This document shows positions 4,077 through 61,209 of a DNA stretch of 64,000 nt, one piece after another. Where the stretch lies: positions 7,440,001 to 7,504,000 of the forward strand of contig NC_135662.1 in NCBI RefSeq assembly GCF_964188315.1, in the 5' to 3' direction. Each line of letters begins with the position of its first letter. Position 1 is the stretch's first letter. The DNA comes from Podarcis muralis. Its lineage: Eukaryota. The notes under the pieces are model-generated. The model did not search any database and was not told the DNA's origin. It saw only the letters and a list, made by a program, of their open reading frames with translations. Position numbers and translations under genes: made by a program.

Positions 4077-4968
4077 TTAAGTTGCTATCATAACCGAGTT
4101 TTCAGTTTTGGATGCTGATTCTTCCTCATCCTTGAAAATCCTCTGGAGTGCAGCTTTCATGGAGACCCTGGACTGGCCCTTTTTCTGTCTCCTCCCAACT
4201 AGGAAATAGATCAGCGGGTTGACACTACTATTCAGAGAGGCACACACAAAACCAACTTCCAATAGAATCATATTCTTCTCATTAAAATAGATGGCAGTGT
4301 AAATGGCATTTAGTGGGAAAGCAAAGATGAGGAAGAAAAGAAGTGCAAGCAAAATGGTGGTGAGCAGCTTCCCGCGTTGATTCTGCTCTGATTTGCAACA
4401 GACTTTGAGGGCCAGTATCAGAGTGGAGGTGACCATCAGAGGAGTGCAAATGAGGGCGTTTACAATAAGCTGGTACACTAAGTTAGAGTCTGGAAAGCTC
4501 TGAGTCAGTAGGAGAGTAAGGTGAATGCCTGAGAGCAGGAAAGAGAGGGTCCATATCAGGGCACAGATAATGGTGGATAAACGTGCCGGCCGGTGGCATC
4601 GATGCCAAAGTGGGAAGAGGACAGCCACAGACCTGTCGATGCTGATGGCGGTCAGTAGAAACTGGCCCGCAGAATACGTGAAGAAAAATAGTTCAAATAA
4701 TACTTTTCTAATCAAAACAGCAACATGGGATTTCTCATAGAAAGTTACAACAGGCAAAATAATAGTCAGGAGAACTGTAAGGACACCAAAGTCAGCGATG
4801 GAGAGGTTCAGGATGTAGGTGGTGAAAGGATTCCTCTTAATGTGGAAGCCCAGAAGCCGGATGACCATTCCATTCCCCAGGAAGCCAAAGATGCAGATGA
4901 TGATAATTATGCTGTTGGCAATGCTTTGGATTACATTTCTATCACGTATTTCCTCAAAATATAATTCC
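4077..4968 (-). CDS. MAS/MRGPR-like GPCR 1, main coding exon (predicted 320 aa with exons 6597-6649 and 7627-7644)
   Basis: 7TM motifs FLGNG, KRNPFTTYILNLSIADF, AISIDRS, PLM, FPLN, NSSVNPLIYF. The frame is open upstream of the tracked ORF to the acceptor ccttttatctctttcag|G at 4969-4970. An in-frame TGA lies just upstream and there is no ATG before TM1. Confidence 0.9.
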
Positions 4969-15020: not shown

Positions 15021-15579
15021 GTTTTCCCAGATGTGGAATTGAATAATAGGTTAATGACTCACTTAGACCTAATTTTGGGAGGGGTCAAATTAATTTTGAC
15101 AAAACTAGTGAATTCTTTTTAGAAGTCTTTTTGGGAAGGTTTTTGCATTCGTTGAGGATGCCTCTGAATAGCTGTTTCTGGGAACCTCAAGTGAGGAGAG
15201 TGCTATTAATCTCTTTAATCACAGAGAGCCAGAACTTTTGTACTTTCCCACAATCCCACCAGAGATGTCTGTAAGCACCCATGAGCTGACATCCCCTCCA
15301 TGACGGTTGATATTGCTGTTTATAGAGGAACGCTTGAAACCAATAAGCATTAGATTGGGAAAGTGGGAATAATATTAATTGATTATATAAACTTCATGCA
15401 CTGGAGAAGCAAAGGTACAGAGAAGAGGAGTGTAAGGAAGATGGCTATGCTGGTTCACGATGAGAAGCTATTTTTTTTACCAACCCCATGGATAGAAGTG
15501 AGGCCTGCCTATAAAAATCCATTGGGAAATCTAAGATTTCACACAGTAGGAACCCTGCTAAGACACCACTCATAGGCGG

Positions 15580-16579
15580 TCAAATCATAACTTTGCTCTC
15601 TGTTCTGGATTTCTTGTCTTCTCTACAGTCTCCCACATCCTTAAACACCCTTGAGATTGCAGCTCTCATGGATACCCTGGAAGGACTCTTCCGTGCTCTC
15701 CTTCCAACTAAAAAATAAATGATTGGGTTGATGAGGCTGTTTACAGAAGAACACCCAAAGCCGATGAGCATGAGACTGTGAAGGTGGGGGAAATAATAGC
15801 AATAGATTACATAAACTGCATTCAGTGGGAAAGCAAAGATGAGAAAGAACAGGAGGGCAAGCAAGATAGCCGTGATGAGTTTTCCTTGCTGGCGTTGTTG
15901 TGCTTTACAGCAGACTTTGATGAACAGGGTCATAGAAGAGATGAACATCAGAGGCGTACAAAGCAGAGCATTTACAAGCAGCTGGTAGTGTAAAAGGGAC
16001 GCCCCAAATCTGCCAGTCATGCGGAGAGCGAAATGGATTGCAGAAAGCAGGAAGGAGAAGATCCATATTATAGCACATATGATGGCGGATGAGTTTGGTC
16101 CCCGGTCAAATCGATGCCAAAGTGGGAAGAGGACAACTACACACCTGTCAATGCTGATAGCTGCCAGTAGATACTGACTGGTAGAATATGTGAAGCAAAA
16201 GAGTTCAAAAAATAATAGAAAAACGCTGTTGAGAATGCGAGATTCACTCGTCACACGAAGGGCAGTAGCAAATGCAGCAGTACTGATTAGAGATACCAAA
16301 AGCCCCAAAATGCAAATAATGGCAATGAAGCTGTTGATTAAATACTTTGCTAATTTGGAGAAGACCAGATCATTTGATGCTACAAACTCGGCAAAAACAA
16401 TGCTGGAGGCAGCAGTTGTGCTATTATTTAAATTTCTAAATATGATACCCTCATTTGAGTTAAGATAATCAGGTATGTCTCCAGAACCACTGTAATCTTC
16501 TGTTATTGCTCGACCATCTGGTTGCTTGGCAATACCCTTTACATAAATTTTAACTTCGGTAATCCTTTCATGCCGATAC
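15580..16579 (-). CDS. MAS/MRGPR-like GPCR 2, main exon; long N-terminus and about 33-aa in-frame TM1-TM2 deletion (337 aa with exon 16751-16764); possibly a pseudogene
   Basis: Has AISIDRC, WHR, PLM, FPLN and NPIIYF motifs. The frame is open for 90 codons upstream of the tracked ORF to a strong acceptor ctcttgttctctttctttttgcag|G (16580-16581). It lacks GNG..KRNPFT..NLA.AD. Confidence 0.85.
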
Positions 16580-16750
16580 CTGCAAAAAGAAAGAGAACAA
16601 GAGTAAGCATTATTCTGCGGTCAATCAAATGATCTACACAACGGGTACACAAACCACACTACCTACAACCCTGACTCCTCATTTGTCAAAGTCATATTGA
16701 TTTGGGTGCGACTGGGACTGGGAGCAACTTCCACTGAGTGAGTCTCTTAC

Positions 16751-16764
16751 CTGATTCCCAACAT
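16751..16764 (-). CDS. Candidate start mini-exon of GPCR 2 (MLGIR)
   Basis: Reads gaaATG TTG GGA ATC AG|gtaaga, a phase 2 donor compatible with the acceptor at 16580 (171-nt intron). An in-frame TGA lies upstream. Confidence 0.5.
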
Positions 16765-16893
16765 TTCTTTCAAAAACTCTCAAGTCAATGGTGGCCATAT
16801 CCACACCATGCCTTTACATTGTTATGATAAACATTGATGGCCGCCCAAAGAATCCTGGGAGTTGCAGTTTGTTAAAGGCACTGAAAGTGCTTA

Positions 16894-17254
16894 AAGGTAA
16901 AGGTAAAGGTACCCCTGCCCGTACGGGCCAGTCTTGACAGACTCTAGGGTTGTGCGCTCATCTCACTCTAGAGGCCGGGAGCCAGCGCTGTCCGCAGACA
17001 CTTCCGGGTCACGTGGCCAGTGTGACAAGCTGCATCTGGTGAGCCAGCGCAGCACACGGAACGCCGTTTACCTTCCCGCTGGTAAGCGGTCCCTATTTAT
17101 CTACTTGCACCCGGGGGTGCTTTCGAACTGCTAGGTTGGCAGGCGCTGGGACTGAACGACGGGAGCGCACCCCGCCGTGGGGATTCAAACCACCGACCTT
17201 TCAATCAGCAAGCCCTAGGCGCTGAGGTTTTACCCATAGCGCCACCCGCGTCCC
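16894..17254 (-). mobile_element. Sauria SINE, full length
   Basis: 5' gggacgcgggtggcgc and an (ACCTTT)n tail. 12-bp TSD TGAAAGTGCTTA at 16882-16893 and 17255-17266. Confidence 0.9.
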
Positions 17255-17394
17255 TGAAAGTGCTTAGGCGTTCCTTATTCCCACCACAGTGCTATAATTC
17301 CAAGAGTTCCATGTGCAAAGAGATTGAGCGTTAATCCACCCTAAGATTAAAGTAGGACTGGGAGAACCATGCATGGCACCATGAGCTCATAATG

Positions 17395-17395
<1 letters not shown>

Positions 17396-17444
<49 letters not shown>

Positions 17445-17750
17445 TTATTGAATTTATATATCACCCTATATCCAGGGGTCTCAGGGCGGTTCACAGAATA
17501 AAATCAAGATATAAAACCACAAAATACATAATAAAAATAAAAACAACAACCCAATAGCCCCCCCCCCAAAAAAAACACACATTTTAAAAGGGCATAGGAT
17601 GTAAATTGGATCAACCAAAGGCCTGGTTAAAAAGGAACGTTTTTGCCTGGCGCCTAAAGGTGTATAATGAAGGTGCCAGGCAAACTTCCCTGGGGGGAGC
17701 ATTGCACAGATGGGGAGCCACTGCAGAGAAGGCCCTGCTCTTGTGTTGCC
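17396..17750 (-). mobile_element. L2 3' fragment with (ATT)n tail
   Basis: gggcggttcacag, ggcctggttaaaaagg and gcagagaaggccc motifs; related to 24905-25145. Confidence 0.7.
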
Positions 17751-18614
17751 CGTTCTCTTTAGAGAAAAAGGTGTGAGATAAATGTGATAAATAAACAAAA
17801 AACTATAAAATAAATCTGGAGGGTGGAATTCTGAAGGTCACATCCTCTTTTTAGTAACCTGACAGAGGCCGCATTCTCTGCCTTATTATTTTTTTTATTA
17901 TTGTATATAATAAATGTCCGTCACATCCAGTTCCCTTGTGATGTTAAAATGATGTATAGAATTTCCTTCCATTGTGGGATGCCTAAATAAAATAACTACT
18001 ATAAACTATGAGAATGGTTTCAAGTGTTGTAAATCAAAGTTATGACTTTATTAAAAAGTAGAAGAGATTGGCAGATGTTCACTAGAGCTGTGCACAACCA
18101 TCCGCCCCATGACATTGATCCAGGGGTTCCTGAATCAGGGCAGACCATGCTGGTTCAACCTGAAGATGAACTGCCCCACCCTGGACCCAATTCTGAAGTT
18201 TGGAGAAGGAGTTGGACACCACACTGGATGCAGAGAGGGACACCAGAAAAGCTCAGATGGATCACACAAGTGGCCCATCTAGTGCAGCATCATGTTCTCA
18301 CAGTGGCCAGCTAGATGCCTCTGGAATAGCCAGACGGAGAAGCTGAGCCCAAGAGCACCCTCTCAGATTGTGACTGCACCCACACAAGACACAAAGGATT
18401 GGGATTAAAATGACAACAGCCTTATTAAAGTCTACTTGAAGGGTCTACAAAGGACTAGAATTACGAAATCTTCAAAGCATTCCAGGCTCCTATAAATCTG
18501 AAACAGTGTAATCTATAGCTTAATCCTTGGATATGTGGGTGAGCTCCCTTGGCTCATGGCCTCAGAGTAGTTAACTCTCTAGCCAAGCTGTTGATGTCTA
18601 GCGATTTCTATCTA

Positions 18615-21469: not shown

Positions 21470-21938
21470 GTCATGGAGGCTGATGGAATCAATGCCAAAT
21501 TGGGAAGAGGACAGCAACACACCATTCAGTGCTGATGGCTGTCAGCAGAAATTGACGAGTGATGTACATGAGGAAAAAGTAAGAGGAAAGGAACCCTTGC
21601 AACAAATCAGAAGAGATATAAAAGCATACAAGGATGCCAAGCTCAGCCACAGCCAAATTCAGGATGAAGATGGTAAAACAATTCATTTTCATGCCAAAGC
21701 CGAGAAGCCAGATGACAGTTAGATCCCTCGTAAGTTCAAAAATGCTAATAACTGAAATAAAGGCAGGGATAATAAGGTATATGATATTCCATAATTAATA
21801 TGTTCATAGTTTGGGAGCCCACTTGCATTGTCTCCTTATCTTCCTCTACAGCATCCAAAAGGGACAAGGACTGAGGGCCATAATTTCTCCTCATGTTGAA
21901 TCTCTGCTTTTGAGCTGCTTCTTGTATGAATCCTCCTC
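21470..21938 (-). pseudogene. MRGPR-like pseudogene, 5' half only (N-terminus to ICL2)
   Basis: Acceptor cctag at 21939-21940 and ATG at 21894. MRRNYGPQSLSLLDAVE resembles gene 3. There are frameshifts, a CGA>TGA change after LFPIWH, and homology then ends. Confidence 0.9.
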
Positions 21939-59206: not shown

Positions 59207-61209
59207 TCACATCTGGCTTTGAACTGGAACTTCTCGTTCCTCTCTGCAGTTTTCCTCCTCTTTTAAAAGTCTCTGGAGTATGACCTTCATGCTCTCCCTG
59301 GATCGAGTCCTCTTGTTTCTCCCAATCAGGAAATAAATCAGTGGGTTAATACTGCTATTCAGGCAGCTGCATAATAACACAACAGATACTTTAAAAGATG
59401 AAACATCATAGTCCAAAGGTGGATTGAAAAAATAGATTAATGAAATGCAAGTAAATGGGAAAGCTAAGAAGAGGAAGAAGAGGAGGGCAAGGAGGATGGC
59501 TGTTAAAGCTTTTCCCTTCTTCCTGTGTTGTGATTGAAACCAAACTTTTATAAACAGGATCAGAGAGGTCGGCCCTAAAGGTGTTCAAGGCAAAAGTGGT
59601 TGCCGTGCTTGCTTATGCTGCCCCGCTCTGGGCCGTGATGACAGATCCTGCTCCTCTTGAGACTCTGCAAAACCAATTCCTACGTCGGCTCCTAATGCTC
59701 CCCCTGTGCGTAAGCAATGCAGCCATGCGACTAGAATTGAAGATCGCATCCTTAGAAACTTGCCTGTGGAAGCAAGTCTTCAATTATTGGTTATCATTGT
59801 GGCATAGATTACCAAACCATTACCTTGTCCAATGCTTATGGCGAGATGAATTCTCTAGCCTTTGGACTAGTAGAATTCATGCCAAACTCCTGAGTTATGG
59901 AATCTCTCCCTCAGATTCCCTAAAACTAGACCAAATCACTGCTCAAAGACTGATCCGTCAAAGACTGGATGGCATCGACTTACAGCGAAATTATACGCTG
60001 GGGGGAGGTGTTTGTTCGCCCCAGAACATTGGTGTCACTTTAACTTACTGCGTTCCATCATACCTCTCTTCCCTTTCGACTGTTGCCCATAGACTGGCCT
60101 TCACCAAAGCGAGGTTTAACGTTTTTCCCTCCAATGTCCTGAGACATAGATTCTCAAAGGGCCAAGCCCCCGCCATGTGCGAATGTGATAAGGAGACGCC
60201 GGAGTCGCTCCAGCACATTATGTTCACTTGCCCCTTGTTCAATGTGCCACGGGCAAATTTGTTGGGATCAATCATACAGAAACTAGAGGGTACCCCACCA
60301 AAATTCCACCTTGCCCAAATCTTGCAGGATAAGGATACCCATACGACCCTGAAAGTGGCTAGGTTCCTGGTCGCTGTCCTTACCCAAAAACGACGCCAAG
60401 GAGCACTACAAGCTAATTAAGGCGTAGTATGCCATTCCATCTTATAGTATTTTATTGTTATAGTGGTGTTTTAGCGGCTGTTTTTTTTCCCCACGTGCAC
60501 AAGCTGTTATTTATGTGTTGTTTTTACCTGTATGGGCCTATGGCCGTAATAAATAAATGATGATCAGAGAGGAGACAGTCATAAGTGGGAGGAAAAGAAC
60601 AGCATTTAACAGAAGCTGGTAGAAAAGGAGGTCCAGAAAAATATTAAAAATAAAAAGAATCAAGTTGATTACAGAGAACAGGAAAGAAATGATCCATATT
60701 GTGGCACACACAAAGGTGGAAAAGTGTGGTGGTCGGTGGCATCGATGCCAAAGGGGGAAAATGACAGAAACACACTTGTCCATGCTAATGGCCGTCAACA
60801 GGTATTGACCAGTGTTGTACATGAACAACAAGAAAAACTCAAACAACTGTACACACAAACTAATATCTACAGATAAGGATGAAAATGACACCACAAGATA
60901 CACAATCAAATAAGAAGATAAGCAAATGAGGGCCCCAAGGTCAGCAACAGCCAGATTTAGTATGAAAGTGGTGAAAGGATTCCTCTTCATGCAGAAACCA
61001 AGAAACCAGATGACAGTCCCATTCCCCATAAGTCCAAAAATGCTAATAACTAGAATTAAGAAATATAGAATAATGCCTGCTATACGATATGTTGATAATT
61101 CATGATCAAAACCGTCCTGGGGGGTTAGGATGTCAGTTCCATTTTCTGCTCCAATATGTTCCCATGAAGCATTCAAAGAGGACCAGGATCCCAGGCCCTC
61201 ATTCCTCAT
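59207..61209 (-). pseudogene. MAS/MRGPR-like GPCR 7, split in TM5 by a LINE
   Basis: 5' half at 60562-61209 and 3' half at 59207-59568. Removing the insert and one TSD gives an uninterrupted frame (..LMTVSSLILFIKVWF..VPVQSQM*). Confidence 0.95.
59569..60561 (+). mobile_element. 5'-truncated non-LTR retrotransposon (RT thumb plus C-terminal CxC-x8-H-x4-C; RTE-X-like, clade uncertain)
   Basis: 279-aa uninterrupted ORF with AVLAYAAPLW..QNQFLRRLL and CECDKETPESLQHIMFTC. Tail aataaataaatgatgat; 11-bp TSD GATCAGAGAGG at 59558-59568 and 60562-60572. Confidence 0.9.

What the first reader, a model, noticed from the sequence alone, without database searches (positions are those of the whole stretch)
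16330..16579. About 85-aa N-terminal domain with a serglycin-like EDYSGSGD motif on an MRGPR
The ORF track hides 90 open codons (YRHERITEVKIYVKGIAKQPDGRAITEDYSGSGDIPDYLNSNEGIIFRNLNNSTT..) that begin right after a strong acceptor. This is about twice the N-terminal length of neighbouring paralogues. Acidic-flanked Ser-Gly-Ser-Gly (16477-16500) fits the glycosaminoglycan attachment consensus, and human serglycin has EDYSGSG as I recall it. The acidic tyrosines fit sulfation and NNST gives two sequons. A proteoglycan-type MRGPR would be unusual, and the motif conflicts with the cytosolic-N-terminus model for the deletion.
Basis: partly seen in the sequence, partly recalled or inferred. Interest (0 to 1): 0.7.

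Follow-up and report, generated by a model that had tools for sequence, protein, structure and literature searches.

The report
Conserved acidic Ser-Gly motif on lizard MRGPR
The long N-terminal tail of this wall-lizard itch-receptor-like gene is real coding sequence, and its sugar-chain/sulfation-type motif is shared by many lizard and snake relatives, but this particular copy carries a deletion that probably makes it a dead allele.

Summary
On the minus strand the frame is open from 16578 and follows a strong acceptor (AG at 16581-16580). EDYSGSGD lies at 16477-16500 and NNST at 16417-16428.

The genome is Podarcis muralis. The NCBI models of Podarcis (P0001) and of the syntenic Lacerta agilis orthologue (P0002) both use this acceptor. 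My first idea, intron left open by chance, was refuted.

The tail as a whole has no match outside lacertids. The Ser-Gly core is different. It is the best-conserved distal column pair in 32 aligned squamate MRGPR tails (S 81%, G 84%). It lies mostly about 30-37 residues before TM1 (45 in Lacerta) in lacertids, anguids, iguanians and snakes, and one Crotalus tigris paralogue has EDYSGSGDI. In an AlphaFold model of the Lacerta protein the motif falls in a low-confidence, probably disordered linker.

A site for an anionic modification (Tyr sulfation and/or a glycosaminoglycan) is plausible but untested. The match to serglycin is only a 7-residue coincidence, and the Asp in it is derived on the reference haplotype.

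The 99-bp TM2 deletion is polymorphic, because two runs carry 99 extra letters at that site. The ancestral exon-1 donor is destroyed, dN/dS against Lacerta is about 0.86, and no RNA reads were found. The motif therefore predates the deletion, and this copy is probably a decaying allele rather than a 6-TM proteoglycan receptor.

The parts
16579..16600 (-). 3' splice site: pyrimidine tract ending in gcag. AG at 16581-16580; 16579 is the first exon base (third base of a split codon, phase 2).
   Evidence: Identical site in Lacerta agilis. Used by the NCBI models P0001 and P0002.
16345..16578 (-). Exon-2 part of the extracellular N-terminal tail (78 codons).
   Evidence: Open frame. 79% identical to the Lacerta tail. 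Codons 24-78 are 95% identical at nucleotide level with omega about 0.6.
16477..16500 (-). E-D-Y-S-G-S-G-D: the local form of the conserved acidic Ser-Gly motif. Ser32 has Gly on both sides.
   Evidence: SG columns are 81/84% conserved in 32 squamate tails. Asp28 is derived: 16496 T>G gives Ala in runs X5/X8, as in Lacerta.
16465..16473 (-). P-D-Y: a second acidic-context tyrosine.
   Evidence: Identical in Lacerta.
16417..16428 (-). N-N-S-T: two overlapping N-glycosylation sequons.
   Evidence: Kept in Lacerta, and aligned with the NGS/NTT sequon column of other squamates.
16258..16344 (-). Single 29-residue hydrophobic segment: the N-terminal part of TM1 fused to the C-terminal end of TM2.
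16295..16296 (-). Junction of a 99-bp in-frame deletion (GNG motif, first intracellular loop, most of TM2 with the invariant Asp). Polymorphic in the species.
   Evidence: Lacerta L001:11704-11802 has no counterpart here. Contigs of X5 and X8 hold 99 extra letters exactly at this junction; DNA run X3 does not.
15577..16257 (-). TM3-TM7 and the C-terminal tail, with the stop at 15577-15579.
   Evidence: Pfam 7tm_1, E 1.8e-10. IDRC and NPIIY are present. The reference has Leu for the conserved Ser of NSSINP (15734-15735).
16751..16764 (-). 14-nt coding start of the NCBI model (ATG...AG, donor GT at 16750-16749). Unproven.
   Evidence: The same letters are present in Lacerta, where the model does not use them.
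17914..17972 (-). Homologue of the ancestral first coding exon (ATG at 17972). Its donor is destroyed and the frame runs into a stop.

Best explanation
The 78 codons are genuine, ancestral coding sequence. They form the exon-2 part of the extracellular N-terminal tail of a squamate MRGPR/Mas-like receptor. EDYSGSGD is the local version of a short acidic Ser-Gly (often Tyr-containing) motif. A large clade of lizard and snake MRGPR-like receptors keeps this motif, mostly about 30-37 residues before TM1, inside an otherwise fast-evolving linker that is probably disordered. The linker lies between a short N-terminal helix and a juxtamembrane helix.

Inferred, not shown: the motif is a site of anionic post-translational modification in the Golgi. 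That could be tyrosine sulfation and/or xylose-initiated glycosaminoglycan on the Gly-flanked serine. The modification would give the receptor a negatively charged tether that captures cationic peptide or protein ligands before they reach the transmembrane pocket, in the manner of chemokine-receptor N-termini.

In the reference P. muralis haplotype the receptor is crippled. A 99-bp deletion removes TM2 and its invariant Asp, the ancestral exon-1 donor is lost, and there is a Ser-to-Leu change in TM7. Here the motif is therefore a relic on a young, probably null allele, not a feature shaped for a 6-TM protein.
For: Both NCBI models use the same acceptor, and the syntenic Lacerta orthologue keeps the frame, YSGSGD, PDY and NNST.

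Family-wide conservation:
- SG dipeptides in 112 squamate tails number 100 against 39.9 +/- 5.7 in composition shuffles; clustered SG occurs in 18 proteins against 2.3.
- The SG columns are the best-conserved distal columns (81/84%) in an alignment covering Lacertidae, Anguidae, Iguania, Viperidae and Colubridae.
- Crotalus tigris P0108 has EDYSGSGDI.
- In Elgaria the motif and the 7TM lie in one uninterrupted ORF.

The AF2 model of P0002 gives helix 18-38 (pLDDT about 80), residues 39-76 with the motif at pLDDT about 50, and a helix from 77 into TM1.

Published site features match. Gly at -1/+1 and acidic residues favour XT1, while basic residues disfavour it (PMC13038410). Sites are -SG- with acidic residues on the N-terminal side and always lie in disordered regions (PMC10424144). 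Sulfotyrosines sit in flexible N-termini of cell-surface receptors (PMC9372746).

Deletion and decay.
Against: - No modification was or could be tested, and the literature states there is no predictive consensus for GAG attachment (PMC13038410).
- The two tyrosines are 9 residues apart, not the usual cluster within six (PMC9372746).
- Shuffle statistics ignore shared ancestry.
- Many annotated tails lack the motif (48 of 117 have it, with 29 state changes on the tree), although many of those models are N-terminally truncated.
- Between Podarcis and Lacerta the gene evolves almost neutrally (omega 0.86 overall, 0.75 in the tail), so recent constraint is not shown.
- There were no reads on the gene in bulk RNA run X23.
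- The 99 inserted letters of X5/X8 were not displayed, so their content is inferred from position and length.
Confidence: 0.55

Rival explanations
1. The Ser-Gly motif is kept only as a flexible, small-residue hinge or spacer between the N-terminal helix and the glycosylated juxtamembrane part, or as an ordinary O-glycan or phosphorylation site. It carries no glycosaminoglycan or sulfate.
For: The motif lies in the low-confidence linker of the AF2 model. Family variants such as SGD, ESGSE and SGGN differ in their flanks. There is no predictive GAG consensus (PMC13038410).
Against: A mere linker would not need S-then-G in that order at 81-84% while its neighbours vary, nor recurrent acidic and aromatic neighbours. 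SG is commoner than GS (100 against 69).
Confidence: 0.25
2. The whole lacertid gene, not only the deleted allele, is a decaying or unexpressed pseudogene. The open tail is inherited sequence that has not yet been hit by a stop.
For: Omega is about 0.86 against Lacerta, and coding identity (95.1%) is about the same as in the intron (about 95%). Both species depart from the near-invariant RCHRPP of the second intracellular loop. No orthologue from other lacertids was returned by either protein word search. There were no RNA reads in X23. The exon-1 donor is lost.
Against: The ORF is intact at 385 residues in Lacerta. The undeleted P. muralis haplotype is closer to the ancestral state. MRGPR families commonly show high omega (own knowledge). 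Only one RNA run was sampled, at 12% and from an unknown tissue.
Confidence: 0.3
3. Transcripts use an internal acceptor (AG at 16404-16403, same phase), as the paralogue at 4077 and Crotalus P0108 do about 20 residues before TM1. In that case the motif would not be in the protein.
For: A ctgctgcctccag tract lies in the same phase as the neighbour's acceptor. The last exon of Crotalus P0108 starts 20 residues before TM1.
Against: The tail is conserved as an open frame with the motif in Lacerta. In Elgaria the equivalent region is contiguous with the 7TM in one ORF. Both NCBI models use 16579. The pyrimidine tract at 16579 is much stronger.
Confidence: 0.07
4. One reading: the deleted protein is a working 6-TM, proteoglycan-type MRGPR.
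For: The frame is still open over 333 codons. The deletion is in frame and occurs in at least two independent samples, the reference and X3.
Against: The deletion removes the invariant Asp of TM2 and the GNG motif. One 29-residue hydrophobic segment cannot keep both the tail outside and TM3-7 in their native orientation. Deletion haplotypes carry about 7 nonsynonymous to 2 synonymous derived changes, including one in NSSINP. The motif predates the deletion.
Confidence: 0.05

Closest known systems
Mammalian and sauropsid MRGPR / MAS1-like class A GPCRs (MRGPRH-like in NCBI naming)
   Same: Pfam 7tm_1 match, IDRC and NPxxY motifs, tandem clusters, and nearest database relatives all named Mas-like or MRGPRH-like. 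A review notes a reptile-specific cluster near MRGPRH (PMC6504862).
   Different: Long tail of about 80-110 residues with a conserved acidic Ser-Gly motif. Mammalian MRGPRX-type receptors have short tails (own knowledge, not tested). The reference allele lacks TM2.
Chemokine-receptor N-termini with sulfotyrosines; CXCR4 additionally reported with chondroitin sulfate on Ser18 next to Tyr21
   Same: A flexible acidic N-terminal segment of a class A GPCR with Tyr beside Asp/Glu (PMC9372746). In CXCR4 there is a Gly-Ser-Gly-Asp next to a sulfated Tyr; this is from my own memory of Farzan et al. 2002, and I could not confirm it in the library.
   Different: No sequence homology and a different receptor family. 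The tyrosines here are 9 residues apart. Nothing has been shown biochemically.
Serglycin (SRGN)
   Same: Seven identical residues, EDYSGSG, at the start of the human Ser-Gly repeat (PMC8359380). Serglycin's repeats carry heparin/chondroitin chains (PMC4859157).
   Different: Only two SG units rather than a long repeat. No Pfam serglycin hit and no other similarity. The Asp is derived in one haplotype. This is a membrane receptor, not a granule proteoglycan. The match is convergent or coincidental.
Part-time proteoglycans and syndecan/decorin-type attachment sites
   Same: An acidic patch followed by Ser-Gly in a disordered extracellular segment (PMC10424144; PMC4859157).
   Different: Attachment has not been demonstrated. 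The host protein is a GPCR.

Membership tests
MRGPR/Mas-like rhodopsin-type GPCR | Pfam 7tm_1 match above the gathering score | tested here: met
   41.2 bits against a cutoff of 30.5.
MRGPR/Mas-like rhodopsin-type GPCR | Seven transmembrane helices, including TM2 with its invariant Asp | tested here: not met
   The reference allele lacks 33 residues (GNG, first intracellular loop, TM2; Asp143 of the A1 alignment). They are present in Lacerta P0002. Runs X5/X8 have 99 extra letters at the junction, but their content was not seen.
MRGPR/Mas-like rhodopsin-type GPCR | DRY-type and NPxxY motifs | tested here: met
   IDRC and NPIIY are present. The NSSINP serine is changed to Leu in the reference only.
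MRGPR/Mas-like rhodopsin-type GPCR | Nearest relatives are MRGPR/Mas-like | tested here: met
   181 hits; every named hit among the 120 listed is Mas-like or MRGPR-like apart from generically labelled entries. Tree.
Proteoglycan core protein (GAG attachment site) | Ser-Gly with small residues at -1/+1 and acidic residues nearby, mostly on the N-terminal side | tested here: met
   E-D-Y-S-G-S-G-D at 16477-16500. Criteria from PMC13038410 and PMC10424144.
Proteoglycan core protein (GAG attachment site) | Site in a disordered, lumenal/extracellular segment | tested here: inconclusive
   The AF2 model of the orthologue has pLDDT about 50 across the motif. The extracellular side is inferred from GPCR topology and conserved sequons. 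It does not hold for a 6-TM topology.
Proteoglycan core protein (GAG attachment site) | A xylose-linked chondroitin/heparan chain actually present | not testable with these tools
   Needs expression plus lyase digestion or glycoproteomics.
Serglycin family | Homology to the serglycin core protein beyond the motif, with a long Ser-Gly repeat | tested here: not met
   No Pfam family on the 83-residue tail at E up to 1. Only two SG units. The tail-only search found only lacertid MRGPRs.
Sulfotyrosine-bearing receptor N-terminus | Tyr flanked by acidic residues in a flexible N-terminal segment | tested here: met
   D-Y at codons 28-29 and 37-38; low-confidence linker; PMC9372746.
Sulfotyrosine-bearing receptor N-terminus | Two or three Tyr clustered within six residues | tested here: not met
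   Tyr29 and Tyr38 are 9 residues apart.
Sulfotyrosine-bearing receptor N-terminus | Sulfation demonstrated | not testable with these tools
   Needs labelling or mass spectrometry.

The most novel reading that the evidence does not exclude
A large clade of lizard and snake MRGPR-like receptors are part-time proteoglycans or sulfoproteins. A conserved Ser-Gly site in the disordered N-terminal tail would carry a glycosaminoglycan chain (with neighbouring sulfotyrosine) that pre-concentrates cationic ligands such as defensin-, cathelicidin- or toxin-like peptides. This would give MRGPRs a two-site, chemokine-receptor-like binding mode.
Probability: 0.3. Interest if true: 0.7.

Novelty: new variant of a known kind. 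Interest (0 to 1): 0.45.

Why it matters
MRGPRs are receptors for cationic peptides and drugs, and how they gather such ligands is an open question. A conserved proteoglycan- or sulfotyrosine-type motif on the tails of a whole reptile MRGPR clade suggests a simple, testable mechanism of electrostatic ligand capture by a modified tail. It would also add a GPCR family to the few receptors reported to carry such modifications. My paper searches found no mention of this for MRGPRs.

For this locus the practical message is more modest. The reference genome carries a young, polymorphic loss-of-TM2 allele, so the reference protein should not be used as the model of the receptor. The Lacerta protein or the undeleted P. 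muralis allele should be used instead.

Tried and rejected
1. My first reading was that 16404-16578 is intron left open by chance, with the true acceptor at 16403. It rested on blastn finding no paralogue similarity beyond 16214 and on a same-phase AG that matches the neighbour's acceptor. The Lacerta orthologue and the family-wide motif refuted it.

2. A tail-only word search (P0002 residues 1-105) found only P0001 and P0002. BLASTP of the tails found only the 9-residue motif against Crotalus (E 0.003) and nothing against Phrynosoma. The tail is not a conserved domain, only a short motif.

3. Mapping motif presence on a FastTree of the 7TM cores gave 29 state changes among 117 tips. This is uninformative because many gene models lack their N-terminal exons.

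4. RNA evidence was not obtained. Bulk RNA run X23 (12% read) had no reads on the gene. X5/X8 are of uncertain kind and their contigs are unspliced across 16579-16750, so expression and acceptor use remain open.

5. I could not verify the CXCR4 Ser18 chondroitin sulfate precedent in the paper library. It is cited as memory only. The held text of the syndecan cloning paper did not contain the consensus passage.

Exon 2 was searched alone by reference, and the database proteins P0001 and P0002 were used as returned.

Full report
**What is there.**
The feature lies on the minus strand. Behind a pyrimidine tract ending in gcag (AG at 16581-16580) the frame is open from 16578 to 15580, 333 codons, with the stop at 15577-15579. 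There is no in-frame ATG upstream of the sixth-helix region. The ORF lister starts at TTG 16308 and so hides 90 codons.

Positions within the tail:
- The first 78 codons precede TM1.
- E-D-Y-S-G-S-G-D is at 16477-16500.
- P-D-Y is at 16465-16473.
- N-N-S-T is at 16417-16428.

At the base composition of the adjoining intron, 78 open codons have a chance of about 0.009. An acid-flanked SGSG appears in about 0.0004 of peptide shuffles.

**Identity.**
Exon 2, searched alone by reference, is 100% identical to NCBI's 337-residue 'proto-oncogene Mas-like' of Podarcis muralis (P0001). It is 81% identical over its full length to a 385-residue 'MRGPR member H-like' of Lacerta agilis (P0002). Pfam gives 7tm_1 for the whole exon and nothing for the tail alone.

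The Lacerta locus L001 is syntenic with the window over more than 20 kb. Both species have the same acceptor and the same phase-2 split codon.

My first idea was that 16404-16578 is intron left open by chance, with the real acceptor at 16403 in the same phase as that of the paralogue at 4077. The Lacerta protein keeps the frame, YSGSGDIPDYLNSNE and NNSTT, so that idea is refuted.

**The tail is not a domain; the motif is what is conserved.**
A word search restricted to residues 1-105 of P0002 found only the two lacertid proteins among 5.8 billion. Pairwise BLASTP of tails finds nothing except the motif.

The motif itself recurs in the tails of squamate MRGPR-like proteins:
- EDYSGSGDI in Crotalus tigris P0108
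- EISGSGSE in vipers
- ESGSG and ESGSE in colubrids
- YSGDSSGDY in elapids
- FSSSGDSEY in Elgaria
- YSGDS, HSGDS and ASGD in iguanians
- YSGDSDDGS in the clade of the neighbouring gene at 4077

In 112 tails there are 100 SG dipeptides against 39.9 +/- 5.7 in composition-preserving shuffles. Eighteen proteins have clustered SG against 2.3 expected. These shuffles ignore shared ancestry.

In a MAFFT alignment of 32 tails from Lacertidae, Anguidae, Iguania, Viperidae and Colubridae, the S and G columns are the best-conserved distal columns (81% and 84%). Most neighbouring columns are at 12-56%. The motif lies mostly about 30-37 residues before TM1, and 45 in Lacerta.

In Elgaria the motif and the 7TM lie in one uninterrupted ORF. 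In Crotalus P0108 the motif is on an upstream mini-exon, as it appears to be in the 4077 clade.

On a tree of the 7TM cores, this gene and its Lacerta orthologue sit next to the Elgaria genes inside the motif-bearing clade. The four single-exon paralogues of the window (26134, 36001, 45120, 50380) fall in a separate clade with 41-44-residue tails and no motif. The tail is therefore about twice as long as that of its window neighbours, but ordinary for its own clade (median 63, up to 185).

**Structure.**
An AlphaFold2 model of Lacerta P0002, built with a 70-sequence alignment (mean pLDDT 76.5), gives three segments in the tail:
- a helix at residues 18-38 (pLDDT about 80);
- a low-confidence, unstructured stretch at 39-76 that holds the SG motif and NNST (pLDDT about 50);
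- a helix from residue 77 running into TM1.

**What the motif most likely does.**
This part is inference. Published work states that xylosyltransferase sites have these properties:
- a central Ser, usually followed by Gly;
- poor tolerance of changes to the Gly at -1/+1;
- enhancement by Asp/Glu and inhibition by Lys/Arg (PMC13038410);
- acidic residues mostly on the N-terminal side, and location always in disordered regions (PMC10424144).

Ser32 (Gly on both sides, Asp at -4 and +2) fits well. However, the same literature stresses that there is no predictive consensus.

Tyr29 and Tyr38 each follow an Asp in a flexible receptor N-terminus, which is the context of sulfotyrosines in chemokine receptors (PMC9372746). 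They are 9 residues apart rather than clustered.

My best reading is an anionic, post-translationally modified tether that attracts cationic ligands. I put about 0.6 on some anionic modification and about 0.3 on a glycosaminoglycan chain specifically.

Human serglycin does contain EDYSGSG (PMC8359380). There is no other similarity, and Asp28 is a derived state. Lacerta and runs X5/X8 have Ala at that position (16496 T>G).

**State of this copy.**

*TM2 deletion.* Relative to Lacerta the window lacks exactly 99 bp at 16295|16296. This removes the GNG motif, the first intracellular loop and most of TM2, including the Asp that is invariant in the family alignment.

*The deletion is polymorphic.* Reads show this:
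- A contig of DNA run X3 spans the junction without extra letters.
- Contigs of X5 and X8, from another study under the same species label, carry 99 extra letters exactly there.
- The kind of library for X5/X8 is uncertain, and their contigs are unspliced.
- The inserted letters were not displayed, so their content is inferred from position and length.

*Other derived changes on the reference haplotype*:
- Arg2 instead of Trp
- Asp28 instead of Ala
- Gly44 instead of Ser
- Arg108 instead of His
- Leu282 instead of Ser, in NSSINP

Deletion haplotypes show about 7 nonsynonymous to 2 synonymous derived changes, which is the neutral expectation, though the numbers are small.

*Exon 1.* The homologue of Lacerta's first coding exon (ATG at 17972) has lost its donor through a 4-bp deletion plus substitutions. 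It runs into a stop and has no in-phase GT. The NCBI model instead uses a 14-nt start at 16764-16751. The same letters exist unused in Lacerta.

*Rates of change and expression.*
- Podarcis against Lacerta gives dN/dS of 0.75 in the tail, 0.91 in the rest and 0.86 overall.
- Coding identity is 95.1%, against about 95% in the intron.
- Bulk RNA run X23 (12% read) put no read on the gene.

*Conclusion.* The motif predates the deletion. Its 'conflict' with a cytosolic N-terminus is therefore no argument about the topology of the deleted protein, which is most likely a null allele. The lacertid gene as a whole may also be under relaxed constraint.

**Verdict.**
The modification is unproven, the serglycin likeness is coincidental, and this copy is a poor representative of the receptor.

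The gene and the family are known and annotated. What appears new is the clade-wide acidic Ser-Gly/Tyr motif on MRGPR tails, for which I found no paper.

Noticed in passing
window 16295|16296: The 99-bp in-frame TM2 deletion is polymorphic in P. muralis. Contigs of runs X5 and X8 hold 99 extra letters exactly here. DNA run X3 and the reference lack them.
   Followed up: partly
window 17914-17972 (minus): The homologue of the Lacerta first coding exon keeps its ATG and an N-x-T sequon, but has lost the splice donor (4-bp deletion plus substitutions) and runs into a stop.
   Followed up: yes
window 16510-16578 and about 17914-17945 (minus): A divergence hot spot. The first 23 codons of exon 2 are only 81% identical to Lacerta (13 of 69 nt, both synonymous and nonsynonymous). 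The 3' half of exon 1 differs at 12 of 30 nt. The intron between them is about 95% identical. Together these two stretches encode the predicted N-terminal helix. In Podarcis the segment gained several Lys/Arg. Possible causes are diversifying selection or gene conversion; this is unexplained.
   Followed up: partly
window 15734-15735: A two-nucleotide change specific to the reference turns the conserved Ser of NSSINP (TM7) into Leu. X3, X5, X8 and Lacerta have Ser.
   Followed up: yes
window 16403-16404 (minus); L004:23442: An internal ctgctgcctccag AG lies in the same phase as the acceptor of the paralogue at about 4969. The last exon of Crotalus P0108 also starts about 20 residues before TM1, with EDYSGSGDI on an upstream mini-exon. 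So intron positions in the tail differ between clade members.
   Followed up: partly
window 16085-16100 (ICL2 codons): Both lacertid orthologues read R-[FL]-D-R-G-P where 90% or more of relatives have R-C-H-R-P-P in the second intracellular loop.
   Followed up: no
window 15305-15445, 21487-21556, 59431-59566: Short MRGPR-like fragments (73-83% identity to parts of this gene) outside any long ORF. They are probably relics of further copies.
   Followed up: no
window 16890-17260 and 17396-17450: A tRNA-derived SINE-like repeat, which attracts many unrelated contigs in the read laying, and an (ATA)n microsatellite. Both lie in the intron upstream of exon 2.
   Followed up: no
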